Below, piece by piece: positions 14,983 to 54,590 of a DNA stretch of 64,000 nt. The notes under the pieces are model-generated. The model saw only the letters and a program-made list of their open reading frames with translations, did no database searches and was not told the DNA's origin. The position numbers were made by a program, and so were the translations under genes. Each line of letters starts with the position of its first letter. Positions within the stretch are counted from its first letter, which is position 1. The stretch lies in assembly GCA_965649765.1 (NCBI GenBank), contig OZ287748.1, positions 73,780,001-73,844,000 of the forward strand. Reading direction: 5' to 3'. Origin of the DNA: Bispira polyomma (taxonomy: Eukaryota).

Positions 14983-15320
14983 CAGTGTATAGCTCTCCTC
15001 CATAGAAGTCTGCCCAGTACTAAATGAGTTAATGAAGTCACAACTTGTCTGACAGCCTCCAGAACAGATTTCTGTCTCTTGTCCACATTTTAAGGCCTGA
15101 TTCTGTAGCACTAGTCTGTGACAGATTTTCCAGAAGTCTAGACACTCCTCACTCCTCACACAGTGCTGGTCCCTTCTGGTGGTGATCTCTCTGATGTAAT
15201 GGGAGCCACACTGGGCTCGACATTGGCTCAAGGTTACAGCCTGGTCTTGGGTTACAGCTGAGGTCATAGGTGGTAAAAGTACTAGTAGCAGAAAACTACT
15301 AGTGGCAGAAAACCGTCCAT
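14983..15320 (-). pseudogene. Paralog D: 5' fragment of the Cys-box membrane protein gene
   Basis: ATG at 15320 is out of frame with the rest (53 nt to the ATG at 15267; short duplication in the signal peptide). Homology stops after EESYTL at ~14983. Confidence 0.9.
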
Positions 15321-16973
15321 GTTATATTATCCAATACTTGATAGATATTATGAATTTTCTGGTTGGTTTCGTTACTTACTTATAGTAAAGCTTGTCACTG
15401 CCTATGCTATTCAATTCACAGGTGTTGTTCAATAGTTTAACATGTATTAATTGAGAATGTGCTTACATGCTGGAGGCAAGTTTGATAATGAACCAACTAT
15501 CTACTTGTACCCTTTATATAGCAGAGTCATCTTGCTCTTTTGTTGAATTCTCCCAATTTAAATTGAGTTTCCATTTCCCTACTCTCAACTGGTTGCTGCC
15601 TGAGTACTGATTTCTTGACATAAATAACTACTCCCCAATTTTTTGAGGGCCTCAGTATATATATAGATACTCTGTAGCAATTGTAGCTGAGTAGGAATGT
15701 GTGATTGCAATTGTGTTTGGCATCAGCTGGATCTTAATGAGGAAATAAACAGCTGTATTTAGTGGACTTATTATAATCATAATTTAAAGTTTAAAACTTG
15801 AAAATTAAAAATATTTTGCTGTAGGATATAAAAAAGAATAAATGAATGAAGTATACATATATTTAGAAATAAATTTGCACAATAAATATGTAATATTTTT
15901 GAAAAATAAAGTAAATTAATTAATGTACCGTAAGTTTTGCAATGTAATCAAGGAGGAATTTAAGATTGTACAGTTATAAAAATGTATTACCATTTTTGTG
16001 AACTATGTGGCCCAATAATATAAAATGTATATTTCTGGTGGATTTTAAAATATTTATTGTTAACTTTACTCAGGTGTATGTAGAGCTTCATTCCATGTTC
16101 AACTGTCCTACATTGGTGCCTCAATTACTTGATTGCAATAATGTGTACATTTTACCAGTTATACATCTTACCTAAAATAATGTAAAATAAAAGTGACTTC
16201 TAAGCCCATTTGGGCTGGGCAATTTTGATATAGATGTATGTATTGCCTGTCACTGTAATAAATAAATACAAATTAATAAATTATATGACCTGTTGAAAAT
16301 TACTCGGTAACTCTAACAAAATGGTAACTATTAAAGGTGTCTAATTATTGTTTTTTTGTAATTTATTGCTATAATTTAACTTATTAGATAGTTATATTTT
16401 GTAGATAAATATACTAGTCCACTAGATCAATCTGTATTAAGTGGATATCATGCTTATTTCATCTTTATATGTGCAACACAACAACTCAAAATTAAACTAG
16501 AACTCCCATTTTTGCCTACATTATTAAAGTTCCCTGAGTTATTTAAATTTAACTTCCCAGTAGGAAAAAATCCCTACTTATTTGCATTATGTAATACAGT
16601 TTATAAAAGTGAACTCCTTACAGACCTACATTATCATATTAAGAACTCAGTAAGGCTATATGTCTAATTGTAATTACTGCAAGTAATTCATGATAAAACT
16701 GACTCTCCCCACTTGCTAATTGCTGAGTAGGTATTTATGCCAAGAAGTCTGGTAATCAAATAAATAATTGCAATTACTGCTCTAACTGCTGCAATTAAAT
16801 TATAAAATAACTGTATATGTTCTCCACCCTGCTAATTGTTGAGTAGGTATCTATGTCAAGGAATCATGTACTCAGGCTAGACCCAGATGAGTAGGCAGGT
16901 AGATCTCTTGGCTGGATTGCAATCTAATATAATAAATAGCAATTGTGAATGACTTCTTCTTTTGACCTATGTG

Positions 16974-17007
16974 TATATAAAGCTGTGATCTTTGTAACTG
17001 CATCATT
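16974..17007 (+). promoter_or_regulatory. Putative TATA box plus initiator of paralog A
   Basis: TATATAAA at 16974 and TCATT at 17003, ~30 bp apart. The same arrangement is conserved upstream of paralog C. Confidence 0.55.
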
Positions 17008-17169: not shown

Positions 17170-18396
17170 ATGGAAGGTTTTCTGCTACTAGTGGTCCTAC
17201 TTTTAGCACCTATGACCTCAACTGTAACCCAAGCCCAGGCTGTGTCCTTGAGTCAGTGTCGAGCCCAGTATGGCTCCCATTACATCAGAGAGATCACCGC
17301 TAGAAGGGACCAGCACTGTGTGAGAAGTGAGGAGTGTTTAGACTGCTGGCAAACCTGTCACCGACTAGTGCTACAGAATCAGGCCTGGAAATGTGCACAA
17401 GAGGCCGGAATCTGTTCTGGAGGCTGTCAGACCAGTTGTGACTTCATTAACTCATTGGGTGAACGGCAGACTTCTACAGAGGAGAGCTATACACTGACCA
17501 CAGAAGTGACCATGAACAACACATTCTTTGTCATTCATGTACACCTGACTACTAATGAAGATTTTGACCATGGAAGAGTTGTATATTCCTTGCTGTACAA
17601 GCACAAGACCAGTCCTGAGTGGAGATATTACTCTTCGAGTTTGGACAGTCAACTGTATGTAGTAGGAACTCACCATATGTATGATGATGTAGAGTTCAAG
17701 GTCATGGCCATGACACCAGAGGGCATTGTGGGAAGTACAGCACTAGTGCACAGTGACCTGAAGGAAGAAGTGGCCGAAAGATCAGCTGAAACAACAACTA
17801 CAACAACTACAGAGAATGTGGAAAGTCTGAGTGGTGAGGCCAGTACTGAAGAACTGACCACAGAGGAGGTCACTGAGTACACAAGTAGTGAGTACATTGA
17901 TAGTACAAGTGCACTTTATAGTACAGGTGTACTTAGTACTACAGAGACACAGGAGCAGAGTAGTAGTTCATCAGGTGAGAAGAGAGACAGTGTAGATAGA
18001 GTAGAGGAAAGCAGTAGACATACACAGACTGTAGTCATAGTTCTGACTCTACTCCTGTCTACTCTCACTGCTACTGTCCTAGTTTTGCTCTGGTTACATA
18101 TCCGACTCCTCAGAATCATAAAGAGACAGTCCAGATTTAACCAGCTCAGAAGAAACAGACCAATCTATAAAGGTGGACATCAAGGACAGACAAAGCCTCA
18201 AACCCAGAAATCTGAATGTCAAGTGATGTTACACTCTGAGCCTGATCAAATGAAGAGTTTGCCTTGTGTTTTTAGGGATACAGCAGTTGTAGTTAATATG
18301 GACTTCAGTAGAGAGGAGATGTCAGTGTGTATTGATCCACTGGGTCCTCCTAAACACTCACACTTTGATCTGAGTCTGGATATTTTTGACTGTTAA
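17170..18396 (+). CDS. Paralog A: type I membrane protein, anosmin-like Cys box, FN3-like region, S/T/E stalk, TM, cytoplasmic tail (408 aa)
   Basis: Uninterrupted ORF from ATG 17170 (the track start at 17155 is TTG, inside a pyrimidine tract/CAG). Signal peptide MEGFLLLVVLLL, C-x5-C-x2-C-x3-C and CQTSCDF, TM VVIVLTLLLSTLTATVLVLLWL, basic stop-transfer residues. Confidence 0.85.
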   Translation: MEGFLLLVVLLLAPMTSTVTQAQAVSLSQCRAQYGSHYIREITARRDQHCVRSEECLDCWQTCHRLVLQNQAWKCAQEAGICSGGCQTSCDFINSLGERQTSTEESYTLTTEVTMNNTFFVIHVHLTTNEDFDHGRVVYSLLYKHKTSPEWRYYSSSLDSQLYVVGTHHMYDDVEFKVMAMTPEGIVGSTALVHSDLKEEVAERSAETTTTTTTENVESLSGEASTEELTTEEVTEYTSSEYIDSTSALYSTGVLSTTETQEQSSSSSGEKRDSVDRVEESSRHTQTVVIVLTLLLSTLTATVLVLLWLHIRLLRIIKRQSRFNQLRRNRPIYKGGHQGQTKPQTQKSECQVMLHSEPDQMKSLPCVFRDTAVVVNMDFSREEMSVCIDPLGPPKHSHFDLSLDIFDC

Positions 18397-20046
18397 GATT
18401 AATGTTGTTATTGTTTTGTATGTAATTGTTAAGTTTTCTCTTGTCTGTGTATATATAACATTGTTATAAGTTGTATGATATACATGCATGTCTAAATTAT
18501 TGAGTTGTTTATAAGATGGTTATAAAAATATGAACTTAAAACATATTTTTTTGTCATTTCAGGACTTCAGTCTACTGTAGAAGCCAATCCAAACATTGAT
18601 TAACTGCTCCTACTTTATTTAGCTGTCCTTAGGAGGTTAAAGTTTTTGCTATACTTCAGTTTATTTGAACTAATTTGCATGAAATGTGGTGAAGGGATTG
18701 GACAGGAGTACCTTAAACTTTGGTGGGATAGCATCCTTGGGCAAGATGTGAACACAACTGACTAATATCTCCATTGGCAGATTAAATATCCTTGGGGACG
18801 TTGATAATGGTCATCCTCAAGCAAGCCTTGGTGCTTATAGTGGCTGCCCATGTGGAAGCGCATTTAAAACTGCCCTGTGTTCTATAAGTGCGCTATATCA
18901 AATGTCCTATTTCATTTCATTTACTGTAAAATACCACCAGCTTAGAGCAAGGACTGGTCAAACTATCCCACATGAAGGAAGGAAAAGTAGTGGGAGTTGA
19001 GCCCACTGTCCTCAAGAGGTGAAAAAGGCTAGTGATATTAAAACAAAAAGATACTTAATATGTCCACTAGGTCACTGCAACGGGCCGGGCCCCTTATATC
19101 TACTTATTAGCAGCTACAATAACAAAAGCTTTTTGAGGCAATTGTGTCGATATATATACAGGTTGATGGATACAGCTTCGCTTAAATAGACTGTCTTAAC
19201 AAATCGCACATTACTCAGATTTAGGAGTGTATTAAAGTAAGCAATCCTAAAATTCAAAACTGTATCTGAAAAATTCGCCACCTAGAAACTGTTGTGTTTT
19301 TGGTAGAAATATTGGGCAATATTTTGCTGAAATTGATATTCTTGTGACTATTTTTCCTTACTTACCTAAATTCCAGTTACTTTTTTGCCCAGGTTTTTAT
19401 TAAATTTGGGTAAAATTGTAAGGGGTAGTCAATTTCAAATACAGTTGCGAATTTTACGATTCCTTTCTCTTAACGTTTCTTGTTGATATATTCCAGACCC
19501 TGGTGACGGTTGTCTCTCTGTGTGTATATTGTGTATCTCTCTCCAAAGTCTATGTGTGCATTCTATAAACAAACCTCATTAATAAATGCTGTTACTGTAT
19601 GTTATAGGCTCAATAAACCTGTCCAGTAAAAAAAAACCCCAACCAATCATTTGTTTTGTTTATCCCACAAATGACACTTCAATCACCATCTAACTACAGC
19701 TTTTTAAAAAAAAACATGGAACATATGACTCCCCCTCTTTCAAAAACTAAATTTAATTGATCAAATTAAACTTGATAATGCAAAACTCAAATAAAACTAA
19801 GGCAACCTTTTGGATAAAAGCATGGGAATGTGCAAAACATCGTCTGTTGAAACTTTAAATAATAAATTTGATAAAACAATTGTCTTTGGCAAAGATCTCC
19901 TTTCAAGGAGTGAAAAATAGCTTCATGATGATAAACAGTATGGTCATCATAACAGTACAGCGACATTCTTTCTGAGAAACTGGTGTAGAACAGTATGTTG
20001 GCTAGAGGTCAAAACATAGAAAATCCTTTGTATGGTTATTTACAGA

Positions 20047-20298
20047 ATTTGAATTTGGATATTTAACGTCCACTCTAGTACCTCTTAGTAGGTTATATTG
20101 GGATGGGTAGTTGGAAACGCTGGAGGAAACACTGCAAACAGTCGGTCAAGGTTCTGCAGAGAAACCAGCGGCCCACAGTAAGGAACTACCACCTTTCCAA
20201 CATAGGCATCAACGGGATTCAAACTCACGCCGCCCAGAGGTGAGAGACCAGTGATTGTGAAGCACAATGCTTGCTAACCACTAGGTCACCGCGGCTCC
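20047..20298 (-). mobile_element. tRNA-derived SINE, full length, with 13 bp TSD
   Basis: Reverse complement of the 1712-1960 family. TSD GGTTATTTACAGA at 20034-20046 and 20299-20311. Confidence 0.92.
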
Positions 20299-22141
20299 GG
20301 TTATTTACAGATGATAAGCACATTTTACCATGTAGCTTTCTGTCATGGCAGGAACAAGACAGAAGCAATTTCAAGGTCCAGAATAAATAAATGTCAAGGT
20401 TCATTGTAGAGTAAATCATAATGCAGCATATTTAAGTCATTATACGGTCAGTTACAACATGTGGCAACATAGGGACATGCCTTCACAACTCTTGCGATTC
20501 TTTCTACAACCAAGTATAATCAAAATGTCCTGCAACAACAAACTGGTTCCTCATGTACCGAATGCAAAATGCAGTTTGATTTAAGTGTATTTTGTACTCT
20601 AACATATCAGTCTCAAAACAATTTTTTTATACATGTACTTATAACGTAGGCGAGTGTTTAGGTTCATTTTCTTTGTTTAATTGAATGTTCGTGTATTTAT
20701 TGTAAATTGTCATAATTTGTAAATCAAAATACAGTTTTCCAGTGTCATGTTCTGGCCTCCTCTCTATTTTTCACCTTGAAGTTATGACCTTGACCTTTTT
20801 CTGGACTGTTGACCTGTTTAACTGCTGGTACTAGTCTCCTAGCAAAGCTTCCACAGACAGTCTCCAATAATTTCAAAAATGCATTTCTTTTATTAACCGC
20901 TCCTTCTATTGCCATTATTAAATGATACAGAAAAAAATACTGCATCGGTATATCAGGCTTTATTGAAAAAAAAACTAGCTTTACACGTCACAGATTTTAC
21001 AAGTATATATTGGTATAAACTGTCAGAAATTTAAACTCTTTCTAGATTATTTATATACAAGTAACTCATAATATCATAGAAAGAAGTCACTTAACTGATT
21101 CAGTCTTTTGAAAAAGTCGGTTATTAAAAAATATTATAATAAATTACAACAGGCTATTATAAAAACTAATCTTGAGACATAATCAGTTTTTAACATACCC
21201 AACTTTTAACGTAGTCAATTTGATAGAACAAAATCAATGTATTAAATGTAGCTGTGATATTTTACGTTTCAACTCGCATATTGGCACAAAATTATTATCC
21301 CCCAATCCTAATACAATTTTCTAAATCAAAACTCTTTTTTCTATTTAGTCTTAGAACCAGTGTAACCTATCAGCAGACGGATCTATATTTTAATATACAT
21401 TTAGTAATCTAATAAATTTAGTAATACATTTAGTAATCTCATAAAAAAATAACATAAAATTCATTGAAACTATTTATCACAACTATTGCAATAAAAAATA
21501 AACAACATAGCACTTGGCACCTATTAGTTATCACTATAAGCTAATAATACTGTTGAAACAACAAACCAATGTTTATATGACTTTATGAAACAAAAACACT
21601 AAAATATTAATTCATGAATACTGATCATTTGTAGGAGTTATAATAGATACACATTAATAAGTTAGGACTGAACACTGTAAGTATATAAATGCACTGAACA
21701 CATACGTTGGTAGATCCTAACTGCTCACAATATTAACTTAAGTTCAATAATTTACATCTGTTTAAAAATTATTTAAAAATTTTAAAGCTATGTAAAAAGT
21801 TAAAAGTTCTATCACAAAATATTTCAGTTAAAATATCAACATAATTAAACAGAAACAAATTATTTTAGGATGGAAAAAAATAACAATATTATATGAAATT
21901 TGTTTTAAAAATAACAAAATTAAACTCTATATTCTGCAAGGTTAACAAATAATAACAGCAAATTATTAAGTTATACAACATATTAACACACAGGAAATAC
22001 ATTAAATCAGTATTAAAAATAACAAAATTACACTGTCTCTTGTAAGGATAAAAATAACAAAAAAATAACAAGATATTGAAGAATCAAGGATAAAAAAAAA
22101 AAAAAAAAAAAAAATGCAACAGTTTTTGAAGTAGGAAATAT

Positions 22142-25100
22142 TTAATCTTTGTGTTGATCTCCATGGAGACCAAATAATTCCTTCTCCATCTCCTTTATCT
22201 GTTTTAGCAGCACAGAACCTGCATCCAGACGCTCCAAGAACTCAGACTGGCTCTTCTGTGTATACGCCTTTAGTTCAGCCACCTCCTTTCTAAACTCCTC
22301 TGCCTCTGATTTCACGGCCTGAATTCCTTGCACTAGACTGGTCAGTCCAATGTGCAGACCATTGGCCAGGTGTGAGGCTCTCTGGAGTTGTAAGCACTGA
22401 TCACAGCCGGCCTTAAAGTGACCGCCGTGTTTGCTGTGGGCATCTGATCTGTACTGGTGGACAAGAAGGACCTGTGGAGGGTGCACAGAAGTAACAAGTT
22501 AATTAAAATGTAAATTTGCATTGATAAAGCACTTTCTTTCAAAGCGCTGTACACAGTTTACACCCCCCCCCCCCCCTCCCAGCCTTGGTTCTTTCACTTG
22601 TCAACAAATTGTTCAGTCTCAGCTCCCTTAAGGAAGCATATACTAGTTATGCTGCCACACACGGCACAAAAATTAACACACCCATTAGCAGCCAGGTACC
22701 TATTTATATACCTGGGTGGAGATGGATAACTTAGTGTGAAGTACCTTGTCCAAGGGTACAATCACCAGACAAACAGTCAGGATCGAACCAGGATCCTCCG
22801 ATCTTCCAAATCTAAAAGTCTGACACTATATCCCACAGAAGTAGTAATTAGTAAGTGGTGAAATGCCTAAAAAAATGACCCCAAAAATGGAGTTCCCAGG
22901 ACCTGACCATTGATAAAAAGTCTCAAAAACTTTGGTTCAATTCCTATCTTTAACATCTTTATCTAAACTGTCATATGTTGGTATACTATGTATAATATAT
23001 AAAATTATATATTAGGGGTAAAATTATATATTAGGGGTGAGCCGGTTAAAACACAGTGCAAATATATAAATTTGGAAGAGGGTGAATATGTTCCTAAAAT
23101 TAAATATTCAGAAAACATAAGTTTGGAGATAACAGAGGTTCTACTGTATATATATATATATATACAGGGGTCAACAAAAGTCACTTACCAAGACAATCAC
23201 TGCAATGGCTAGTAGGAGTGCAACAAGATATCCAGCAGCTCCAGATTCTACAGTAATAAACATCCAGCTCCAGGCTTCAGCAAATTCTGCCAGCTGACTG
23301 AATCCAATCAATACCAGATTATACAGCTTGTTAAAGCATGCCATTGATGCCTCAAAGCCACACTTCAGAGCAGACAAGACTCCACCAATGACAAGACCAA
23401 GAACAGCAACCAGAGCAGGTAACATATCGGCATGGTGAATGGTTGTATACCCGGCTGTAGATAAGACATCCATGATGTGAGTAGCCTTCTGGAGGAGATC
23501 CTTGCTAAAGTGATCATCATTGAATGTGGCAGCCACAACTTTGTTTTCTTCTTCCTCAGAAATAGTCACCTCGCATACCCTCATCCTCTGTTTGTGGGTT
23601 TCATGAACTGGGCTGTTGTTGTTACCCATGACAGCATCAAAGCCAAAGCTAAGGCCATCTGTGACAAGCAGGAAGCCATCAGAGAAGATAGATTTTCCAG
23701 TGGCCATGAGGTCCTTCATATCTTCTGCCATAACTGCAGAAGAACTTCGTACAATGGTCACCAATCCTTTAGCAACATCTATGGCAGCTACAATAAGACA
23801 AAAAGAAATGTTTAGCTAAAGTTATATTTACTACTGCATATCTTAATTAACATTAAAGGGTAATTTACTATAACTTCTGCATGGGTAGCTCTGGCTTCAG
23901 TCTACCCTTGGCCTCGGCCATTAAGAAATTTACTTCGTACTGATTTTACACGGGCAGTCGAGGCCAAGGGTAGGCCAAAAGCTAGCACCACCCATGTACT
24001 AGTCACTCTTAGATATAAATGTACATATAAACTTATATTACTGGTTATTTAAACACAGAATATAGTCTTGTACACACTTTAAAAAAAAAATAAATAAATA
24101 ATTTACGGGACAACATTAACGTTTCCAGATAAAGGACACACCACTTCATAACAAAATTTAGTATTACTTAGTTATCTTCAGACCTGACATGCCACTTTTG
24201 TCAGAATTCATAACTCACTTTCCGAGTTCTGTTATTTACACAAGCAAATATGTATTGTAGATTAGAAGTTTATCAAATTGAAAAATCAAAGCTTTTAGGA
24301 TTGATCACACATTGTAGAAGTATTAAGGTGTTGACATATTTAACACATACCAGAAATGTATGTTCTGTCGCCCTGGTTGTATTCTTTGACTGAGTACATT
24401 GTACCAGCATGGCTAAGGCCGTCATACATGGGAAATCCACAGCCTGGCAATACCAGGTCACCCTGCATGACAACATCACAGCCCTTAAAACAATAAAGTG
24501 AAGAGTTCATATGTTATTTATTTTATTTTAAGCAGCATTCAACTATCATCATTTGATATAAATTGAAGTATACAGTATAGAACATATATATATATATATA
24601 TCTAATCTAATCTAGTCGTACTTTTATAGTGCTTAATCTTTGTACAACAAATTCTAAGGCGCAACAAACCCAAAACGTTAATCGAAAATCAAAAATAGTG
24701 GGCGGATGGAAGTCATAACCAGGGAGACTACCGTAAATGGTTGCGACGGCTAAGGTGGAAAAGCCTGTTCAAAAAGATAGGCCTTCAGCTTACTCCTGAA
24801 AGAGGAGAAAGTTTGAGCCAGGCGAACATGACCAGGTAGGCTGTTCCAAATGAGGGGGCCATCATGAGCTAGGCAGTGATTGAACTGAACTTTGGATTTG
24901 TGGATGCGAGGGTCGAAAGTGGGAATGTTAAGGTATAATCTATCAGGGTTACTGCGCCTTGTCCTGACTGAGCATGTATATTTGGACAGATGGGGGCTAA
25001 AATAAGTGGGTAATCCAGAAATTTATATATTATTGTTGCTGTTTTGAAAGCAACACGATATTTTATTGGGAGCCAGTGCAATGACTTGAGTACAGGAGTA

Positions 25101-25856
25101 ATGTGGGAAAATTTAAAAGTTTTGGTCACAATACGTGCCAACGAGTGTTGGATATTCTGAAGGCGTCTGAGATGACTACGATATAAGGAACGTATATATA
25201 TATATGGGAGAGCAAGATTTATTCTGATAACATGAGGCCTATAAAATAGTATCAACAATGGGAGAATTTAAATTTGGTCAACTGTAAAACAATTTTACAA
25301 AATTGAGGTCTAAATAATATACATTCTATGGTGCACCAGCTAGGGTTTTTTTGTTGTGGCATTTACGTTTTCATAGTAGACATAAATTAAGCAGCAATAT
25401 ATGGTCTTTAAATCACATGTACGTTGTAGAACTTAGTAAAATATAAACTTTTGTTGTGTTTATTAAATGTGCTGTATCACAGTAATCTTGCCTAATTATA
25501 CTTTGTTGTTTTCACATAAAACTCTCCTAAAAAAAGTCTACGTTTGTGAAAACCTCAACTAAAAAGTCTACGTATACCACGAAAACGTAAGTGCCACGAA
25601 AACGCCATAAACAACCACAACCAGGATCCATTATGTTGACGTTTTCGTCACACTAAAATATTTGTTTGAAAACACAAACCTTCAGTTTTTCATCTGTTTG
25701 CACATATCTGTACTGAGACTTCAGTAGCAATACAAACAGGAAAAGTATTACACCAACGTGTAATATCTTGTGTAATATCTTCCGATACTTCAGCTTCTCT
25801 ATCTGCTTCATTATCTTCTGACGCTTCTGCTTACGTATCTTCCAACGCTTCATCAT
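22142..25856 (-). CDS. Uncharacterised 4-exon membrane protein with C-terminal coiled coil, copy 1 (~412 aa)
   Basis: Exons 25856-25680, 24483-24351, 23787-23189, 22471-22142. GT-AG introns with compatible phases 0,1,0 and no internal stop. Alternative in-frame ATG at 25961. Confidence 0.72.
22660..22835 (-). mobile_element. Degenerate SINE fragment (conserved-core type)
   Basis: CCAGGTACCTATTTATATACCTGGGTGGAGA...CTTGTCCAAGG...GGATCGAACC (reverse B box). Confidence 0.6.
23880..23996. mobile_element. Small foldback element/MITE in intron 2 of the orphan gene
   Basis: CATGGGT...CTACCCTTGGCCTCG pairs with CGAGGCCAAGGGTAG...ACCCATG. Confidence 0.65.
24600..25190 (-). mobile_element. 5'-truncated L2-type LINE 3' end inserted in a (TA)n tract
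   Basis: RRLQNIQHSLARIVT...[26 protein letters not shown] tail, (TA)n on both sides. Confidence 0.9.
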
Positions 25857-25951
25857 TAAGATGATGGTAAATATTATCAAATATTCATGAAAATAATATT
25901 CTCCCAACTTTTTTTGCAACCGTTTCCAAGAAAAGCGAACTTGATAATAAG

Positions 25952-25974
25952 ATGACGTCATGCGTCACGTGACG
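25952..25974. promoter_or_regulatory. Adjacent palindromic CRE (ATGACGTCAT) and E-box (CGTCACGTGACG)
   Basis: Perfect palindromes ~100 bp upstream of the ATG at 25856 of the orphan gene. Confidence 0.5.
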
Positions 25975-26495: not shown

Positions 26496-26515
26496 GGGGC
26501 GGAAGTCTGACGTCA
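26496..26515 (+). promoter_or_regulatory. Overlapping GC box, ETS site and CRE
   Basis: GGGGCGGAAGTCTGACGTCA. Confidence 0.5.
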
Positions 26516-29810: not shown

Positions 29811-29818
29811 TGCTTCTT

Positions 29819-43953: not shown

Positions 43954-46900
43954 TAAGATGATGGTAAATATTATCAAATATTCATGAAAATAATATTCTC
44001 CCAACTTTTTTTGCAACCGTTTCCAAGAAAAGCGAACTTGATAATAAGATGACGTCATGCGTCACGTGACGGTGTAAAATATTCTCCGCGACGTACCGAA
44101 AGAATTGTGCGCAAACATTTTGCAAGTTGTAAATGTGTAACGTTAATAATTGTGATTGTGTAACGTCAATTGTGACTTTATGACAAAAATAAATGTGTAA
44201 CGTCAACAATTGTGACTTTACAACAAAAATAAACGAGAGTACAATATGTGTTAGTGCTTGAGTCAAGTTTTGAATAACATTACGCTAAACTCGGCTTAGA
44301 ACTATTTATTGTACATATGCATGGCAAAACGCATAACGTCCTCTTTTAGGCCTAGTACAAAGATTAACTGTTTGTCGTCAGTTTTTCTTGACATAATGCC
44401 CCGCATACAATCCTGCTTATCAGTGTACCCAGCATCAGTCAAAAACAGGTTGAAATAATGCCTTAACAGTCGTGTATAATTGTGGGGCCAAAACTCGCCA
44501 TGATTGCAACTGAAAAACGAAACATAAGGGTAATATCCAGCTGTTGTCTGTGAATCAGACACGGTTTGGTGGGGACAGAGAGTGGGGTATTAGGGGCGGA
44601 AGTCTGACGTCATAAACACCTATTTTTTTGTTTTTTGTGACGTGACACACCACATATTTCTAAGGTTGAAGATTATTTTGTTGTTGAGAAAATTGCATAT
44701 TTGACTATTTGTAAATATGAAGTCTTAACTACAAAAATTACGTCCTTTTTGTTCGTTCCTGGAACCACCATTTGTCTTAAACTTCTGCAGTCAGGTTAAA
44801 ACAGTGGAAACGACATCAATATAGGTAGGACATAGATGGTTAATGTATACATGTACGAGGGCATTATGTTACCTGTCGCAAGCTCTGTGTGGATGTGACA
44901 TGCGCCAATACAGTACAAAGATAAAAAAAATATCCTCTACTATATTAACCAGGCATAAAGGTAATATGTGCTACATATTGACATTCACACAGAGGGTCTT
45001 TTTGCTTTACAATAACAGCACAGATCTGCCCTGGCTATTGGGGGGAAAGTCCATACACTAAATATGGATGTTACCATTTGATAACATGTTACAGCTCTAG
45101 TTAAATCTAATTTAGAAATTTTTTGTGTATTATGCCCCAGTCCCACCGGATTTACGTTAGTCTATGTTAACCACCAAAGGCTGTCGCAAAAATTGGATGC
45201 AAAAATCCACACACAAGGGGGAAACCCCAGGCAGAAGTCGATTTATATTTTTTATTACGTCAAAGGCATTAACTTGCGCAGAGATCCATGTATTTGTACG
45301 TCAACACCTGTAAAGAGTTGCACACATTTGTACGCAAATACACATAAAACGACGCACATTGACACGTTCAAGGCCATAATATTATATTAAACCACGTAAT
45401 TTATTATGTTATATAGGTAATACTATTGATATAGGTAATACTACATCAATGTCTATGTATTCTTACGCTGTATGATTTGTATTACGTTAACACTCATGTG
45501 GCTACGTCAAACCACGCTTTAGAAATAGATGTTCGCAAGTCTATGTTTTTTGGCCACATTGCTTGCCGCATCAATCTTATGTGGTTTGCGTGTCCAAATT
45601 TCAAACGGTATCAAATTATAGATTTCTTGAATGTCATCTCTCACGTCAGATTATGTATGTTTATGTATATTACATTAGCTCCCGCAAACACCACGCAAAC
45701 CCTACGCAAAATGATTTCGTTTAATGACTGCTTATGTGAAGTGCGGTGGAACTGAAGCATTACAGTAGAATTAAAGACTTTCGGTGCCAAGTTAAAAGAT
45801 GGCCATTTACAATGTTGGCTGTTGCTGTTTAGAATATTGACTGTATGCTTGATGTTTTACTAGGATAAATTAATGGGGACCAAAGGTCTATTGTTAATAG
45901 GTAAATATTATGTTAGTAAATGTAGCAAAGGAAAACAGAAAACTAGGTTTGCTATTTTGTTGTTGTTTTTTTTTGTTTATTCTAAGAGATCGTTTAGACA
46001 TTGGTAAGCAAATAGCAATAAAAACTACTCTAATTTAAACTTTAAAAACTTAAAAGTTTTGAGAGTTACTCGTGCTATATCTAATTAGTAATGATATATC
46101 TTTATGTGACCTTGGTAGTAAACAATTTTTGTTTTTGTCAAGGTTTGTAAGGATATACTGAATGTGTAAAAATAAATCGCATTTTGTACACCAAAAGTTA
46201 AGACTAATCACTTTTATTCTGGGGTAGTGCTTTATACAAGGTTACGTCCAAGAGTTCTATACGGCCTTGTCTAGTTGATATTTTCGTCATCGGTAAAATA
46301 AACATTCTTTTAATAAAAGCAAAGACTTGGAAACTACATTAACTGTTAGATAAGAGGACAATCTATAAAAATGATATCACAACATAGAAGTTGATTCAAT
46401 TAAAAGGCATTTAAAATGGCATTGACGGAAATATCTACTTGACAAAAATATCACAGAAGAGGGTGCAGAATCTCCCAATGTTCTCCTAATATCAAAACGG
46501 TATCGTTTCCAATGATAAATTTTATTCCTATAAACACCAATAATAATAATAATTGAAACGTTTATAAAGCACCAAATTGACGAGAACATTCTGTAAGGCG
46601 CTGATATCCAAAAAGGGTAAATTTCAGGGCCAAGCAAAATGTGGTTACCAGAAAGCATCCACCAAAAGAAGGGTGACTTAGGATGGGGATAGGCCAGTTT
46701 GAAAATTGTATTGTATTGTATTGTAGATTTTAAATGTGCATACTTGTAAAACAGTTAAAATGCATATTTAATATGAAGAGTTCCCTTAATATGTCCTTAT
46801 CTATAGTGTTATTGAAAAGGTAAGTTTCAAGGTGGCTTCTTAAACCAGTGATTTTATCCTATTAAATAAAAGGCCACATGCATGGCCATAACCTCATACC

Positions 46901-47579
46901 ACGAACAATAGGCATAATGTACACAAATAATTTTGTATTATAAATAATAATAATAGTTCTTCCAATATAAGTAATATATAGGTCAACTAGTATAAATGAT
47001 CATGTTTATATAATCAGGGATTGCATGTTCATTTATATGCTTTGTTTTAAAAAAAGTGACTTTTAGTTATAACTTAAAAATTCTTTGCTTTATGAAATAC
47101 TGGTGATTTTTCTAACAACGGTTTTCATCAATCCTCGCGTACATTATTGATAAAACCATATACCAATTTATAATTTCCCCACGAACCATAACGTCCCCAA
47201 TGAGGTGATCTCGATATTACGTAGTAAACTGCTAAAAACTGTGAAATTGTGGGTATGTTTTAAAAGGGCTGTCATTAATATCTCTGCTGGGGTATATTTA
47301 TACATTAGGTGTTACATTATGTAGCCAGTATATTGTATGACATAAAATGAATATAATTTGCAATTAGAGTCTTTTCTCAAAGCGTTTTATATTACCGTAC
47401 GTAGAGCTGTAACGACACACGTAGGTAAAAGTCACGGTATTGTAAAACGTTAAAAATACATATTAAACATGGAGGATCTTCTTAGTGTTGGGGGTACAAC
47501 AAGATATACCAGCTACCTAATGAAAGAAGTAAAAAATATATCTAGCGGAGATATAACGACAGGTACTTTAAAAAGACAC

Positions 47580-47907
47580 CAGCAGTTGTAGTTGATATAG
47601 ACTTTAGTACAGAGGAGATTTCAGTGTGTATTGATCCACTGGGTCCTCCTAAACACTATGACTTTGATCTGAATCTGGATATTTTTGACTGCGAAGCTTA
47701 ATTTTGTTATTGTTTTGTATGTAATTAAAGTTTTTTTGGTTCTGGGTGAATCTTGTGTCTGTAGCATTATTATAAGTTGTGTATTATACATGCATGTCTA
47801 AGTTATTGAGTTGTTGTTAAGATAGTAATAAAAATATGAACTAAAGAAATACGTTATTGGATCACTTCAGCCAACTCTAGAAGCAGTTAGAAATATTTAT
47901 AAACAAC
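47580..47907 (+). pseudogene. Paralog E2: 3' relic, duplicate of E1
   Basis: Identical at +18097. Confidence 0.88.
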
Positions 47908-48529
47908 TGCTTCTTTTATTACCCAGCTGACAAGATTATGTTTTTAATGTTTTTTGGTCTGAGTCCGTTGGTTTGTTTGTCACGAAGATTTTTTTTTACA
48001 CAAAAAATGATTTACATGAAATTTTGTGGAGGGTTGTGTCATGGGTGAAAGAATAATCCAATAAATTGGGCAGGGCAGACCCATTTTTTTACATTTTTAC
48101 TGTGCCTCAGCCTTGGCAGAGGTATGCATTCCATTGAGTGCCTTTTAGATGCCGAATTGTAATACAAGTATAGATTAAAAAGAAGATTTTGAGATTTAAA
48201 ATTCTATTAATTTGACAAGTTATTCAGAGACACCATCTTGTCTTATGTACTGTAAACAACAGAAATAACTCGGCTCTGCAGTAAACTTATTCAAAGGTTT
48301 GCTGCTGATGGGATTCGATCCTGGGAAAACCCCGTAAGCCAGAGTGTTTAATGCACTGATATACATGGATAGTACAATACGCAGGATTATCTGAGACCAT
48401 AATGCACTCCGACAAGTTTGTTGACATTGTATGGAAATATAAACAAAACCAAAAACCATAATCCAAATCCAAACCATAGGAATGCAGTGATAACATTGCA
48501 CCCCTGGCTCATAGATAGCTAGTAGACAT

Positions 48530-48730
48530 GCGCCATATTCACAAAAGGTCTTCGTATTAACTTAATCATGAGATTTTGGTCTTAGTCCCAGTGACATTAA
48601 GAAAAGATTGTTTGTTTCTGTTAACTTTGCACTTTACACTAAGACTAACAGTAGACAGTCTTTAATATTTGAGACAAAAATGTTAAACTTAAGACTAAGT
48701 CAAGACTTAGACCTTTTGTGAATACGGCCC
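48530..48730. mobile_element. Harbinger-like MITE, duplicate of 30433-30633
   Basis: Identical at +18097. Confidence 0.8.
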
Positions 48731-50267
48731 CAGATGAATAGTGCCTAGGATGACCATTTAAAAAATTGTTGGTCCTCTTTCACAGACTCCTACCCAAGTG
48801 GCAGAGTGATGTAGGGTTCACACCATGAGAGTATAGAGAGATGGTAAGAGATATTTTGAAAAATTCCCCTGTAGTGCGGGGAACCCTATCTATAACTTCC
48901 CTTAACTTCAGCTTCCTTCCCAAACCTTCTACAGTCGGCTATAAATTTCTTTCTTAGGATCTTATTTTACGACAGCAAAATAAATGAATGAATTGTGTTA
49001 TTATATTCAATAGGTTGAATACCATAACAAGCATGTGTCCACAACGTTTGGTACATGTACAGTATGTGGACTGTAGATGCTTTTTAAAAAGTTTAGCATC
49101 AAAAAAACAGTGTAGAAGAAGTAATTCCCATTTTTATATAATTTTTGAGGTGGTTGCTAGGATGATTATTGATTGACAGGTCAAGTTCCCTCCCCCAACT
49201 ATACTGTTTTATTGTGAAAAATACAGCCTGGGAAAAACCCACTCAAGTTCCCTCATATAAAATGACCTGAAAGCACTAATTTTATACACACAACTACATA
49301 CACACAAGATTCTGTATGTTTGGCTTTTTATATCTAGGGGAAATGAGGAGGGGGCTTTATAGTTATTAAAGCAATCTCTGTGTGCTTGTTTAGTATCCTT
49401 AAGACAGAAATACTGTAGATTAGAAATACTGTTATTTTATTTCTGGAAGTTTCACTGTAAATATATTTTGTGTATCATTCTAAATATTTGCAAACTTGCA
49501 ACAAACATTACAGTGCGACAGCCACTTCAATTATTTAAACCCCCATCATTGTCTTTAAGATGCGTACATCATATATTTTATAATTTCTCTTTTTAGCACT
49601 TGTGACGCTGTTTTTTTTTTTTCCTTTCCATCAGGTTAGAACTCACAAACTATCAGGAGGTAAGTGTTTTTTGTCAAATAACGTGTGCAGCTTTTCGTCC
49701 ATAAAACTACTTTTCACCCACATGGTCATCTGGCGATGGGGCCACAAGCGCACTTTATTCTATTCTTGTTGATAAAATTCAAAATTACTACACAACTTTC
49801 TCTTTATCTGTATTGTATTCGAATTTATACTCAGCTCAGTATATTTCTGCCTTATTTTGTACAGTAAAAAGACACTCAGTAGAGTGCTTACCTCTGCCAA
49901 GGCCTCACAGTCAAAAAAAGTGACTTCTGCCTAGATATGCTCCAATGTTTAATGTACTCCTGTCCCATTCTTTCACCACATTTCATGTAAATTAGTTCAA
50001 ACAAACAGAAGTATGGCAAAAACGTTAACCTCATAAGGACAGCTAAATAAAGTAGAAGCAGTTTATCAATGTTTGTAACGGCTTCTAGAGTAGACTGAAG
50101 ACCTCAAATGACAAAAAATATTTCTTGAATTCATATTTTTATAACCATCTTATAAACAACTCAATAATTTAGACATGCATGTATATCATACAACTTATAA
50201 CAATGTTATATATACACAGACAAGAGAAAACTTAACAATTACATACAAAACAATAACAACATTAATC

Positions 50268-51497
50268 TTAACAGTCAAAAATATCCAGACTCAGATCAAA
50301 GTGTGAGTGTTTAGGAGGACCCAGTGGATCAATACACACTGACATCTCCTCTCTACTGAAGTCCATATTAACTACAACTGCTGTATCCCTAAAAACACAA
50401 GGCAAACTCTTCATTTGATCAGGCTCAGAGTGTAACATCACTTGACATTCAGATTTCTGGGTTTGAGGCTTTGTCTGTCCTTGATGTCCACCTTTATAGA
50501 TTGGTCTGTTTCTTCTGAGCTGGTTAAATCTGGACTGTCTCTTTATGATTCTAAGGAGTCGGATATGTAACCAGAGCAAAACTAGGACAGTAGCAGTGAG
50601 AGTAGACAGGAGTAGAGTCAGAACTATGACTACAGTCTGTGTATGTCTACTGCTTTCCTCTACTCTATCTACACTGTCTCTCTTCTCACCTGATGAACTA
50701 CTACTCTGCTCCTGTGTCTCTGTAGTACTAAGTACACCTGTACTATAAAGTACACTTGTACTCTCGATGTACTCAGTACTCCTATACTCAGTGACCTCCT
50801 CTGTGGTCAGTTCTTCAGTACTGGCCTCACTACTCAGACTTTCCACATTCTCTGTAGTTGTTGTAATTGTTGTTTCTGCTGCTTTTTCTGCCACTCTGTC
50901 CTTCAGGTCACTGTGCACTAGTGCTGTACTTCCCACAATGCCTTCTGGTGTCAAGGCCATAACCTTGAACTCTACATCCTCATACATGGAGTGAGTTCCT
51001 ACTACATACAGTTTACTGTCAAAACTAGAAGAGTAATATCTCCACTCAGGACTGGTCTTGTGTTTGTACAGCAAGGAATATACAACTCTTCCATTGTCAA
51101 AGTCTTCATTAGTAGTCAGGTGTACATGAATGACAAAGAATGTGTTGTTGTTTATGGTCACTTCTGTGGTCAGTGTATAGTTCTCCTCTGTAGAAGTCTG
51201 CCCTTCACCCAATGAGTTAATGAAGTCACAACTGGTCTGACAGCCTCCAGAACAGATTCCGGCCTCTTGTTCACATTTCCAGGCCTGATTCTGTAGCACT
51301 AGTCGGTGACAGGTTTGCCAGCAGTCTAGACACTCCTCACTCCTCACACAGTGCTGGTCCCTTCTAGTGGTGATCTCTCTGATGTAACAGGAGCCACACT
51401 GGGCTCGACACTGACTCAAGGACACAGCCTGGTCTTGGGTTACAGCTGAGGTCATAGGTGGTAAAAGTAGGACCACCAGTAGCAGAAAACCTTCCAT
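50268..51497 (-). CDS. Paralog B2: full-length type I membrane protein (409 aa), identical in protein to B1
   Basis: Intact ORF from ATG 51497. Confidence 0.85.
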   Translation of the reverse strand: MEGFLLLVVLLLPPMTSAVTQDQAVSLSQCRAQCGSCYIREITTRRDQHCVRSEECLDCWQTCHRLVLQNQAWKCEQEAGICSGGCQTSCDFINSLGEGQTSTEENYTLTTEVTINNNTFFVIHVHLTTNEDFDNGRVVYSLLYKHKTSPEWRYYSSSFDSKLYVVGTHSMYEDVEFKVMALTPEGIVGSTALVHSDLKDRVAEKAAETTITTTTENVESLSSEASTEELTTEEVTEYRSTEYIESTSVLYSTGVLSTTETQEQSSSSSGEKRDSVDRVEESSRHTQTVVIVLTLLLSTLTATVLVLLWLHIRLLRIIKRQSRFNQLRRNRPIYKGGHQGQTKPQTQKSECQVMLHSEPDQMKSLPCVFRDTAVVVNMDFSREEMSVCIDPLGPPKHSHFDLSLDIFDC

Positions 51498-53347
51498 GCT
51501 TACTGCAAACAAAGGTTATGTTCAGACAATCTTAATAAAAATAATAAAGTCTCCAATAAAATCAATACACTTTGTGCTTTTAGTAGACAATACAGATAAG
51601 TATTTATAATATAGTATTTCAACAGTAATGGTTCAGTCACAGTTGAGTGTAAGTTTGATAATGATGCAGTTACCAAGATCACAGCTTTATATACACATAG
51701 GTCAAAAGAAGAAGTCATTCACAATTGCTATTTATTATATTAGATTGCAATCCAGCCAAGAGATCTACCTGCCTACTCATCTGGGTCTAGCCTGAGTACA
51801 TGATTCCTTGACATAGATACCTACTCAACAATTAGCAGGGTGGAGAACATATACAGTTATTTTATAATTTAATTGCAGCAGTTAGAGCAGTAATTGCAAT
51901 TATTTATTTGATTACCAGACTTCTTGGCATAAATACCTACTCAGCAATTAGTAAGGGGGGAGAGTCAGTTTTATCATGAATTACTTGCAGTAATTACAAT
52001 TAGACATATAGCCTTACTGAGTTCTTAATATGATAATGTAGGTCTGTAAGGAGTTCACTTTTATAAACTGTATTACATAATTCAAATAAGTAGGGATTTT
52101 TTCCTACTGGGAAGTTAAATTGAAATAACTCGGGGAACTTTAATAATGTAGGCAAAAATGGGAGTTCTAGTTTAATTTTGAGTTGTTGTGTTGCACATAT
52201 AAAGATGAAATAAGCATGATATCCACTTAATACAGATTGATCTAGTGGACTAGTATATTTATCTACAAAATATAACTATCTAATAAGTTAAGTTATAGCA
52301 ATAAATTACAAAAAAACAATAATTAGACACCTTTAATAGTTACCATTTTGTTAGAGTTACTGAGTAATTTTCAACAGGTCATATAATTTATTAATTTGTA
52401 TTTATTTATTATAGTGACAGGCAATACATACATCTATATCAAAATTGCCCAGCCCAAATGGGCTTAGAAGTCACTTTTATTTTACATTATTTTAGGTAAG
52501 ATGTATAACTGGTAAAATGTACACCTTATTGCAATCAAGTAATTGAGGCACCAATGTAGGACAGTTGAACATGGAATGAAGCTCTAAACACACCTGAGTA
52601 AAGTTAACAATAAATATTTTAAAATCCACCAGAAATATACATCTTATATTATTGGGCCACATAATTCACAAAAATGGTAATACATTTTTATAACTGTACA
52701 ATCTTAAATTCCTCCTTGATTACATTGCAAAACTTACGGTACATTAATTAATTTACTTTATTTTTCAAAAATATTACATATTTATTGTGCAAATTTATTT
52801 CTGAATATATGTATACTTCATTCATTTATTCTTTTTTATATCCTACAGCAAAATATTTTTAATTTTCAAGTTTTAAACTTTAAATTATGATTATAACAAG
52901 AAGTCCACTAAATACAGCTGTTTATTTCCTCATTAAGATCCAGCTGATGCCAAACACAATATTGCAATCACACATTCCTACTCAGCTACAATTGCTACAG
53001 AGTATCTATATATATACTCAGGCCCTCAAATAATTGGGGAGTAGTTATTTATGTCAAGAAATCAGTACTCAGGCAGCAGCCAGTTAAGAGTAGGGAAATG
53101 GAAACTCAATTTAAATTGGGAGAATTCAACAAAAGAGCAAGATGACTCTGCTATATAAAGGGTACAAGTAGATAGTTGGTTCATTATCAAACTTGCCTCC
53201 AGCATGTAAGCACATTCTCAATTAATATATGTTAAACTATTGAACAACACCTGTGAATTTAATAGCATAGGCAGTGACAAGCTTTACTATAAGTAACGAA
53301 ACCAACTAGAAAATTCAAAATTTCTATCAAGTTTTTGATAATATAAC

Positions 53348-54590
53348 ATGGAAGGTTTTCTGCTACTATTAGTCCTGCTTTTATCACCAATGACCTCAGC
53401 TGTAACCCAAGACAAAGCTGTAACCTTGAGTCAATGTCGAGCCCAGTGTAGCTCCCATTACATTAGAGAGATCACCACCAGAAGAGACCAGCCCTGTGTG
53501 AGAAGTGAGGAGTGTCTAGACTGCTGGCAAACCTGTCACCGACTAGTGCTACAGAATCAGGCCTCGAAATGTGGACAAGAGGCTGGAGTCTGTTCTGGAG
53601 GCTGTCAGACCAGTCGTGATTTTATCAGCGAAGTTATAAAATCACAGTTGAGTGAAGGGCAGAATTTTACAGAGGAGAGCTATACACTGACCACAGAAGT
53701 GACCACGAACAACAACACATTCTTTGTCATTCATGTACACCTGACTACTAATGAAGACTTTGATCATGGAAGAGTTGTATATTCCTTGCTGCACAAACAA
53801 AAGACCAGTCCTGAGTGGAGATATTACTCATCTAGCATGGACAGTCAACTGTATGTAGTAGGAACTCACTCCATGTATGAGGATGTAGAGTTCAAGGTCA
53901 TGGCCTTTACACCAGAGGGCATTGTGGGAAGTACAGCACTAGTGCACAGTGACCTGAAGGACAGAGTGGCAGAAAAAGCAGCAGAAACAACAATTACAAC
54001 AACTACAGAGAATGTGGAAAGTCTGAGTAGTGAGGCCAGTACTGAAGAACTGACCACAGAGGAGGTCACTGAGTACACAAGTAGTGAGTACATTAAGAGT
54101 ACAAGTGTACTTTATAGTACAGGTGTACTTAGTACTACAGAGATACAGGAGCAGAGTAGTAGTTCATCCAGTGAGAAGAGACAGTGTAGATAGAGTAGAG
54201 GAAAGCAGTAGACATACACAGACTGTAGTCATAGTTCTGACTCTACTCCTGTCTACTCTCACTGCTACTGTCCTAGTTTTGCTCTGGTTACATATCCGAC
54301 TCCTCAGAATCATAAAGAGACAGTCCAGATTTAACCAGCTCAGAAGAAACAGACCAATCTATAAAGGTGGACATCAAGGACAGACAAAGCCTCAAACCCA
54401 GAAATCTGAATGTCAAGTGATGTTACACTCTGAGCCTGATCAAATGAAGAGTTTGCCTTGTGTTTTTAGGGATACAGCAGTTGTAGTTAATATGGACTTC
54501 AGTAGAGAGGAGATGTCAGTGTGTATTGATCCACTGGGTCCTCCTAAACACTCACACTTTGATCTGAGTCTGGATATTTTTGACTGTTAA
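53348..54590 (+). pseudogene. Paralog C2: same pre-TM frameshift as C1; ORF 53348-54193, 281 aa, plus a Cys-to-Arg change
   Basis: Same GA deletion; CQTSRDF instead of CQTSCDF; TM/tail sequence is A-like. Confidence 0.8.

What the first reader, a model, noticed from the sequence alone, without database searches (positions are those of the whole stretch)
14983..54590. Expanding cluster of intronless cell-surface proteins with an anosmin-1-like cysteine box
Seen: eight copies or relics of one gene (A, B1, B2 intact; C1, C2 frameshifted; D, E1, E2 fragments) between PEX7 and AHR. Each intact protein has a signal peptide, C-x3-C...C-x5-C-x2-C-x3-C...C...C-x3-C-x3-C-DF, a beta-rich FN3-like segment (VVYSLLYK...EWR...VEFKVMA.TPEG), an S/T/E stalk, one TM and a ~90 aa non-catalytic tail. 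Known: the C-x5-C-x2-C-x3-C spacing and CxTSCxF ending match the N-terminal Cys box of anosmin-1 (KAL1), which is secreted and has a WAP domain that is absent here. Inference: a lineage-specific, membrane-anchored receptor/ligand family under birth-and-death evolution, a pattern often seen in recognition (immune, self/non-self, gamete) genes.
Basis: partly seen in the sequence, partly recalled or inferred. Interest (0 to 1): 0.8.

Follow-up and report, generated by a model that had tools for sequence, protein, structure and literature searches.

The report
Fend-family surface-protein gene cluster
This is a cluster of single-exon genes for membrane proteins related to the insect axon-targeting protein Fend; their cysteine-rich tip looks like the "CATCH" domain at the tip of the ROS1/Sevenless receptor, and half of the apparent cluster growth is one 18-kb stretch present twice in identical form.

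Summary
The eight gene copies and relics exist where stated. E2, B2 and C2 are a near-perfect replica (2 mismatches outside the tail) of E1, B1 and C1, made by one 18,097-bp tandem duplication. Its junction lies in the gene's 3' end. The junction copy's 10 private variants are absent from the only public reads. So there are five independent sequences.

No window copy pairs an intact ORF with the canonical 10-Cys framework. Intact canonical copies lie on other contigs, and the genome holds 19 family loci in four subfamilies.

The proteins are homologues of arthropod Fend (hhalign 97.3%, E 2e-11). The family spans annelids, a brachiopod, bivalves and arthropods. In Mactra, Dreissena and Lingula the same N-terminal module heads FGFR/RET-like receptor tyrosine kinases.

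The beta segment is a true FN3 domain. The Cys box is predicted as a disulfide-stapled helical bundle. Its best solved matches are the CATCH domains of Sevenless and ROS1, with weak Z (3.2-5.3). Pfam's anosmin Cys_box matches none of 38 members, so the anosmin link is structural resemblance only.

dN/dS is 0.15-0.55, so diversifying selection is not seen. Transcription could not be tested. Earlier scan notes concern this same window only.

The parts
14956..15294 (-). Relic D: N-terminal fragment (aa 4-123; signal peptide, Cys box, start of FN3). It has lost the invariant Cys of the C-x2-C-W motif.
   Evidence: tblastn, 75% identity to A; Cys-box profile 69 bits; translation
17170..18396 (+). 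Gene A, intact single ORF of 408 aa. Signal 17170-17238; Cys box 17239-17457 (9 Cys, second framework Cys replaced by Tyr); FN3 17458-17763; S/T/E stalk 17764-18030; TM 18031-18102; tail 18103-18393.
17983..36614 (.). First copy of the tandemly repeated stretch (period 18,097 bp). It starts inside the 3' end of gene A and ends 121 bp past the stop of C1.
   Evidence: Offset identity scan and three-way comparison
36080..54711 (.). Second copy of the repeated stretch. It is identical to the first except at 35518/53615, 35598/53695 and 10 sites in the tail.
29485..29595 (+). Relic E1: last 37 codons of the tail (81% identity).
32171..33400 (-). Gene B1, intact single ORF of 409 aa, 11 Cys in the box (extra Cys37). 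TM at 32465-32536. The 3' third is about 100% identical to A.
35251..36493 (+). Gene C1: canonical 10-Cys box but a 2-bp deletion in an AG microrepeat at about 36078-36080 shifts the frame before the TM.
36181..36337 (+). Ten variants private to the C1 tail, which is the junction copy. They are absent from A, B and C2, from every other locus of the assembly, and from all read contigs.
47582..47692 (+). Relic E2, exact replica of E1.
50268..51497 (-). Gene B2, exact replica of B1.
53348..54590 (+). Gene C2: same 2-bp deletion as C1. The last framework Cys is changed to Arg (site 53695). Its tail is identical to A's tail.

Best explanation
The window holds a tandem cluster of single-coding-exon paralogues of the Fend family. 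These are type I membrane glycoproteins.

Anatomy: the ectodomain head is a roughly 70-residue Cys domain with ten framework cysteines. It is predicted as a disulfide-stapled helical bundle of the CATCH kind found at the tip of ROS1/Sevenless. It packs onto one FN3 domain. An ~89-residue S/T/E-rich, probably O-glycosylated, stalk raises the head above a single TM helix. A 97-residue non-catalytic tail follows, with a conserved basic juxtamembrane motif.

Inferred function: the head is a partner-binding module. In bivalves and a brachiopod the same module is the N-terminus of FGFR/RET-like receptor tyrosine kinases, and Drosophila Fend alters motor-axon targeting when misexpressed. The kinase-less proteins most likely act as cell-surface recognition or co-receptor subunits. 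They would bind an unknown extracellular partner and signal, if at all, through adaptors on the tail.

Shown evolution: the cluster changes by tandem duplication, unequal recombination within the homogenised 3' end, gene conversion and decay. The copies in this window look like the decaying edge of the subfamily rather than its functional core.
For: Homology to Fend:
- A 5-sequence ectodomain profile retrieves 39 proteins from 1.84 billion. They include NCBI 'uncharacterized protein fend' of Cloeon dipterum.
- hhalign of the window-subfamily profile against that Fend gives probability 97.3%, E 2.2e-11, 157 columns, with all framework Cys aligned.
- Atlas features and shape searches independently rank arthropod FN3/Fend clusters first (score 0.93; TM 0.80 over 166 residues).

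Module in RTKs:
- Mactra KAL4237986, Dreissena XP_052275055 and Lingula XP_013384387/XP_023932380 carry PK_Tyr_Ser-Thr after the module.
- The Mactra ectodomain hits the window genes reciprocally (E 4e-9).

FN3:
- The family profile hits solved FN3 domains (PTPRdelta 2e-5, DCC 3e-4).
- Pfam fn3 reaches its cut-off inside the module in the tick member.

CATCH-like Cys box:
- AF2 models have pLDDT 86 and pTM 0.83 / 0.77.
- The only PDB entries aligning both domains are ROS1 ectodomains (Foldseek E 7e-4).
- C3a/C5a also appear, as that paper reported for CATCH.

Architecture: it is general across the family, with a conserved N-x-S/T sequon at the start of FN3.

Evolution:
- Duplication.
- Tails of A, B and C2 about 100% identical against 4-12% divergence upstream.
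- Mosaic dS: A vs C7 ectodomain 0.20, tail 0.89.
- Tight in-species clade.
- Purifying selection overall (omega 0.15-0.55).
- Cys losses and gains and frameshifts in every window copy, whereas the C11 and C7 copies are intact and canonical.
Against: - No expression data: no RNA run holds the locus.
- No sequence-level match to ROS1 or Sevenless.
- Disulfide connectivity was not examined.
- The two-domain model does not superpose rigidly on ROS1 (TM 0.33; not in the VIA top 50).
- Function is transferred from one Drosophila gain-of-function study at about 26% identity.
- Tails differ completely between subfamilies, so signalling is unknown.
- This genome has no detectable kinase-bearing member to partner with.
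Confidence: 0.72

Rival explanations
1. The Cys box is a true member of the anosmin-1 Cys_box family, so these are membrane-anchored anosmin relatives.
For: An arthropod 'anosmin-1' cluster of the ESM Atlas superposes on the two-domain model (TM 0.58, 129 residues, rmsd 3.0). That recollection is memory, not a test.
Against: PF17869 matches none of 38 Cys boxes at E<=10, and none of 32 full-length members. The family's Cys-box profile finds only family loci in its own genome. There is no WAP domain. An Atlas features search of the Cys box among named clusters gave nothing. No anosmin sequence was available through the tools for a profile-profile test.
Confidence: 0.3
2. The apparent expansion (E2, B2, C2) is an assembly artefact. 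The real locus has one unit: D, A, E, B, C.
For: 100% identity over about 17.3 kb. The junction copy's 10 private variants appear in no read contig of three runs, which all show the A/C2 letters at full depth. A single C1/C2 SNP at 35518 is kept in both forms in the same data. No other locus carries those variants. A/C2 tail identity with an odd middle copy does not fit a simple unequal crossover.
Against: Both letters at 35518 are present in reads, as two copies or two alleles would give. Long-read assemblers more often collapse than expand repeats. The junction sits in a 535-bp homogenised repeat, the expected substrate for real unequal recombination. Contigs can drop rare variants, and all laid sequence was inside the unit, so no single-copy depth was available.
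Confidence: 0.4
3. It is a rapidly diversifying immune, self/non-self or gamete recognition family under positive selection.
For: Multi-locus tandem expansions with birth-and-death. FN3 omega (0.4-0.55) is higher than the Cys box (0.15-0.3). Stalk length varies among C4-array members.
Against: All pairwise omega values for ectodomain regions are under 1. Ectodomains of loci on different contigs are kept 88-96% identical by conversion rather than diversified. There are no expression or challenge data. The only functional precedent is neuromuscular targeting.
Confidence: 0.12
4. The window's copies are all non-functional or decaying. Function resides in the canonical copies on contigs C11 and C7.
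For: No window copy combines an intact ORF with the canonical 10 Cys. A has 9, B has 11, C1 and C2 are frameshifted, D and E are fragments. C11a, C11b and C7 are intact with 10 Cys.
Against: A and B keep 408-409-codon open frames. A-B ectodomain omega is 0.49 and tail dN is 0. An extra or missing Cys can be tolerated or used for dimerisation. P0002 in a relative also lacks one Cys.
Confidence: 0.3

Closest known systems
Drosophila Forked end (Fend, CG12664) and its arthropod orthologues (e.g. Cloeon dipterum XP_065335863)
   Same: Sequence-level homology of the whole head (hhalign 97.3%, E 2e-11, 26% identity, all framework Cys aligned). Same order: signal peptide, Cys box, FN3, linker, one TM, short non-catalytic tail.
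   Different: Arthropod members have a 130-200-aa linker, which is a second FN3 in spider and millipede members. Here it is an 89-aa S/T/E stalk. Tails are unrelated. Here the coding region is a single exon, and the genes are multi-copy in tandem clusters.
CATCH domain plus FnIII-1 at the N-terminus of ROS1/Sevenless (PDB 9bfp, 9pvp, 9oyz; PMC11743138, PMC13044245, PMC13100127)
   Same: A disulfide-stapled helical Cys domain at the extreme N-terminus, followed directly by FN3. It is the best solved structural match of the Cys box. ROS1 ectodomains are the only PDB entries aligning across both domains.
Lophotrochozoan receptor tyrosine kinases carrying the same head (Lingula XP_013384387 'VEGFR1 isoform X4', Mactra KAL4237986, Dreissena XP_052275055)
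   Same: Homologous Cys box plus FN3 at the N-terminus (profile E 8e-6 to 4e-5; reciprocal E 4e-9). Single TM.
   Different: They have a 270-320-aa linker (one has a Pfam fn3) and an FGFR/RET-like kinase domain. The window genes have no catalytic domain, and this genome has no detectable kinase-bearing member.
Anosmin-1 (KAL1/ANOS1) N-terminal Cys box, Pfam PF17869
   Same: A Cys-rich N-terminal region with a similar C-x5-C-x2-C-x3-C core (recalled, not tested), followed in the protein by FN3 domains. One Atlas structural match (TM 0.58).
   Different: The Pfam profile does not match (0 of 38). Anosmin is secreted, has a WAP domain between the box and FN3, and has four FN3 domains.
ALKAL (ALK/LTK ligands) and anaphylatoxins C3a/C5a
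   Different: These are soluble ligands with a different Cys count. The resemblance is at the level of general fold only.

Membership tests
Fend family (Forked end-like type I membrane proteins) | Significant sequence similarity to a Fend orthologue over the ectodomain | tested here: met
   hmmsearch E 7.9e-4 against 1.84e9 proteins with a 5-sequence profile. hhalign probability 97.3%, E 2.2e-11, 157 columns.
Fend family (Forked end-like type I membrane proteins) | Architecture: signal peptide, Cys-rich region, FN3, single TM, short non-catalytic tail | tested here: met
   Hydropathy and domain layout of A, B and 25 family members.
Fend family (Forked end-like type I membrane proteins) | Role in neuromuscular target recognition | not testable with these tools
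   Known only from Umemiya et al. 2002 (pmid 11984842, cited in PMC2276209 and PMC9966960). No expression data for this genome.
CATCH domain (ROS1/Sevenless) | Two disulfide-stapled helical hairpins (about four helices, multiple disulfides) | tested here: inconclusive
   AF2 models (pLDDT 86) give helices 4-15, 23-29, 31-45, 50-54 and 61-72, with ten conserved Cys placed on or beside them. Disulfide pairing could not be read out.
CATCH domain (ROS1/Sevenless) | Structural superposition on solved CATCH domains | tested here: inconclusive
CATCH domain (ROS1/Sevenless) | Position at the mature N-terminus, directly followed by an FN3 domain | tested here: met
   Foldseek aligns both domains only to ROS1 ectodomains (E 7e-4).
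CATCH domain (ROS1/Sevenless) | Sequence similarity to the ROS1/Sevenless N-terminus | tested here: not met
   The Cys-box profile has no PDB sequence hit at E<=10.
Anosmin Cys_box (Pfam PF17869) | Match to the PF17869 profile at or near the 29-bit cut-off | tested here: not met
   0 of 38 Cys boxes at E<=10, and 0 of 32 full-length members at E<=0.001. The window was not picked up in the genome scan with PF17869.
Anosmin Cys_box (Pfam PF17869) | Followed by a WAP four-disulfide core domain | tested here: not met
   No WAP in any Pfam scan.
Anosmin Cys_box (Pfam PF17869) | Same fold as the anosmin N-terminus | tested here: inconclusive
   One Atlas match to an arthropod anosmin-1 cluster: TM 0.58 by query, 129 aligned. 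No anosmin sequence or model was available for direct comparison.
Fibronectin type III domain | Profile similarity to known FN3 domains and a 7-strand beta sandwich | tested here: met
Receptor tyrosine kinase | Cytoplasmic tyrosine kinase domain | tested here: not met
   No kinase in A, B or any of the 19 loci of this genome.

The most novel reading that the evidence does not exclude
The Fend-family head is a previously unrecognised occurrence of the ROS1/Sevenless CATCH-FnIII-1 module. If so, CATCH-FN3 is an ancient, mobile ectodomain cassette. It would be shared by ROS1, by an undescribed class of lophotrochozoan FGFR/RET-like receptor tyrosine kinases, by kinase-less Fend-type proteins and perhaps by anosmin-1. 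The kinase-less, expanded mollusc-type paralogues would then be tethered ligand-like or decoy partners of such receptors.
Probability: 0.5. Interest if true: 0.6.

Novelty: new member of a known kind. Interest (0 to 1): 0.45.

Why it matters
Fend has been an orphan since one 2002 study. [quoted passage not shown]

If the link holds, CATCH gains a family-wide context: kinase-less surface proteins across protostomes, and a second RTK class with the same head. Fend gets a structural hypothesis. The possible kinship with anosmin's Cys box becomes testable.

For genome annotation, these loci can be named Fend-like rather than left as hypothetical proteins. The apparent recent expansion should not be counted until the duplication is checked with long reads.

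Tried and rejected
- Pfam on full proteins and on isolated segments found nothing for the window proteins.
- PDB sequence search with protein A found nothing real. The Cys-box profile against PDB gave zero hits.
- PF17869 on the genome gave two weak candidates. The better one (L002) is a short AT-rich frame ending in a stop, and I judged it spurious.
- An Atlas features search of the Cys box among named clusters gave no usable hit.
- I asked whether the kinases attached to the module are ROS1-type, which would have tied the module to ROS1. They are FGFR/RET-like.
- I looked for a gene-conversion donor for the C1-private tail variants. None exists in the assembly.
- Transcription: only three DNA-type runs from one study hold the locus, and none is RNA.
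- Depth-based copy counting was not possible. The one read-laying run lay wholly inside the duplicated unit, and the tail is shared by A, B and C.
- Two-domain rigid superposition on ROS1 did not appear in the VIA-align lists, which FN3 domains dominate.
- Pfam on the ten longest flank ORFs did not verify PEX7 or AHR.
- A literature search for any anosmin-Sevenless/CATCH link returned nothing.
Full report
OBSERVATION

- D, 14956-15294(-): fragment, aa 4-123.
- A, 17170-18393(+): intact, 408 aa.
- E1, 29485-29595(+): last 37 codons.
- B1, 32174-33400(-): intact, 409 aa.
- C1, 35251-36490(+): frameshifted.
- E2, B2 and C2: the same three, 18,097 bp further on.

An offset scan shows that 17983-36614 is repeated at 36080-54711. 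About 17.3 kb is 100% identical. Two mismatches lie in the C body (35518 and 35598; the second turns the last framework Cys of C2 into Arg). Ten more lie in the tail. So eight pieces reduce to five independent sequences.

The C1/C2 frameshift is a 2-bp deletion in an AG microrepeat at about 36078-36080. That is exactly the 5' edge of the tract that is identical to A.

THE DUPLICATION

The repeat boundaries lie in the gene's 3' end, which occurs three times (A, C1, C2). Over this 535-bp tract A and C2 are identical, and C1, the junction copy, has ten clustered private variants. After the tract, A and C1 continue alike while C2 runs into unique sequence. The 3' third of B, on the opposite strand, is also about 100% identical to A, although the ectodomain-coding parts differ by 4-12%. 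A homogenised tail of this kind is a natural substrate for unequal recombination.

The junction is not confirmed by the reads:
- Only three public runs, from one study and probably the assembly's own source, hold the locus.
- In all three, the only contig covering 36080-36442 carries the A/C2 letters at all ten sites, at full depth.
- In the same data, the single C1/C2 difference at 35518 is kept in both forms.
- No other locus in the assembly carries the C1-type tail.

Contigs can drop rare variants, and the laid stretch contained no single-copy reference. I therefore put the chance that the duplication is an artefact at about 0.4.

FAMILY SIZE

The same genome (1.04 Gb, 75 contigs) has further members:
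- Intact copies at 83-84% identity on contig C11, as a head-to-head pair.
- An intact copy at 73% on C7, plus a copy with an internal deletion.
- Three divergent subfamilies at 24-34% identity: one gene on C2, one on C4, and a seven-member tandem array on C4.

All are single ORFs of 405-479 codons. The Cys-box profile finds 19 places in the genome, all of them these loci.

In the window, no copy combines an intact ORF with the canonical ten Cys. A has 9, B1 and B2 have 11, C1 has 10 but is frameshifted, C2 has 9 and is frameshifted, and D has lost one. C11a, C11b and C7 are intact and canonical.

WHAT THE PROTEIN IS

Pfam, a PDB sequence search and a word-based homology search left it open. 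The word search found only two unnamed relatives at 55% identity.

An exhaustive profile search with an ectodomain alignment found 39 proteins among 1.84 billion, most of them covering the whole head. Their sources are Capitella, Lingula, Mactra, Dreissena, ticks, mites, spiders, a millipede, a damselfly and the mayfly Cloeon. The Cloeon protein is named 'uncharacterized protein fend' by NCBI.

hhalign of the window-subfamily profile against that Fend gives 97.3% probability, E 2.2e-11, with all Cys aligned. Atlas searches by features and by shape independently put arthropod FN3/Fend clusters first.

Fend (CG12664) is known from one gain-of-function study of neuromuscular specificity (Umemiya et al. 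2002, cited in PMC2276209 and PMC9966960).

Three to four family members are receptor tyrosine kinases (Mactra, Dreissena, two Lingula) with FGFR/RET-like kinase domains. The Mactra ectodomain hits the window genes reciprocally. This genome has no kinase-bearing member that I could detect.

DOMAINS

With a 38-sequence alignment (A5), the second half of the head matches solved FN3 domains by sequence. AlphaFold2 gives a confident two-domain model with pLDDT 86 and pTM 0.83: five helices, then a seven-strand sandwich.

Foldseek's top three PDB hits are the 2026 ROS1 ectodomain structures. They are the only hits that align both domains.

The ROS1 and Sevenless papers describe an N-terminal 'CATCH' domain followed by FnIII-1. 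[quoted passage not shown]

A Cys-box-only model (pLDDT 86) was searched without Foldseek against 48,161 chains:
- Chicken ROS1 26-99 and C3/C5/C5a also appear.

These are consistent but individually weak. There is no sequence-level match to ROS1, and Foldseek on the box alone is not significant. I rate 'CATCH-type domain' at about 0.6.

ANOSMIN

Pfam's Cys_box (PF17869) matches none of the 38 boxes even at E<=10. There is no WAP domain. One Atlas structural match to an arthropod anosmin-1 cluster (TM 0.58, 129 residues) keeps a distant fold relationship possible. Family membership was tested and not met. I could not obtain an anosmin sequence through the tools for a profile-profile test.

EVOLUTION

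Pairwise dN/dS is 0.15-0.3 for the Cys box, 0.4-0.55 for FN3 and about 0.3 for the tail. There is no sign of pervasive diversifying selection.

dS is mosaic. A vs C7 gives ectodomain 0.20 and tail 0.89. A vs B gives 0.08 and 0.01. This points to repeated gene conversion or segment exchange.

In a tree of the head, the window, C11 and C7 copies form a very tight group (paths 0.06-0.12). They sit inside a 100/100 clade with the relative's P0001/P0002 (0.4) and the C2 paralogue. Each other in-genome subfamily pairs with a sequence from another assembly. So one subfamily expanded recently in this lineage, while the family itself is old.

MECHANISM (INFERRED)

The head is a partner-binding module displayed on a mucin-like stalk. 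The same head on kinases shows that it can serve as a receptor ectodomain. The kinase-less proteins would act as recognition molecules or co-receptors.

Not shown: expression, localisation, partner and signalling.

NOT VERIFIED

The PEX7 and AHR flanks and UTR introns were not verified.

Noticed in passing
window 23171-23764 (-) and its replica 41268-41861 (-): A 197-aa ORF with hydrophobic C-terminal segments and no Pfam match lies inside the duplicated unit, so this second gene is duplicated as well.
   Followed up: partly
P0026 (Mactra KAL4237986), P0059 (Dreissena XP_052275055), P0028/P0021 (Lingula XP_013384387, XP_023932380): Receptor tyrosine kinases of about 970-995 aa. Their N-terminus is the Fend-type Cys box plus FN3, and their kinase is FGFR/RET-like. 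One is auto-named 'VEGFR1'. This looks like an undescribed lophotrochozoan RTK class.
   Followed up: partly
G000:C4:71633347-71661025 (L017-L020): A tandem array of seven divergent family members (448-479 aa), one with a premature TGA and one N-terminally truncated. Their stalks contain a variable number of a 10-residue P/T-rich repeat (TTQVPHTDPL-like), so stalk length differs between neighbouring paralogues. Retroelement ORFs lie between array members.
   Followed up: partly
G000:C7:10174870-10175865 (L014): A family copy with an internal deletion that joins the Cys box, just after its seventh Cys, directly to the middle of FN3. A frame disruption follows in the TM region.
   Followed up: no
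window 33106: Read contigs show a C/G polymorphism inside B (24-45% of depth) that neither B1 nor B2 carries in the assembly.
   Followed up: no
window 36743-36939, 37334-37530 and 38122-38515: Very high k-mer depth, up to about 5e5 in X1 and 1.8e6 in X2, with many internal joints. These are high-copy repeats just downstream of the gene tail at the start of the duplicated unit.
   Followed up: no
L001 (relative's contig, ERZ22147071), around 10001-11122: The 55%-identical relative P0001 is also a single ORF and is flanked by reverse-transcriptase ORFs (RVT_1) on both sides.
   Followed up: no
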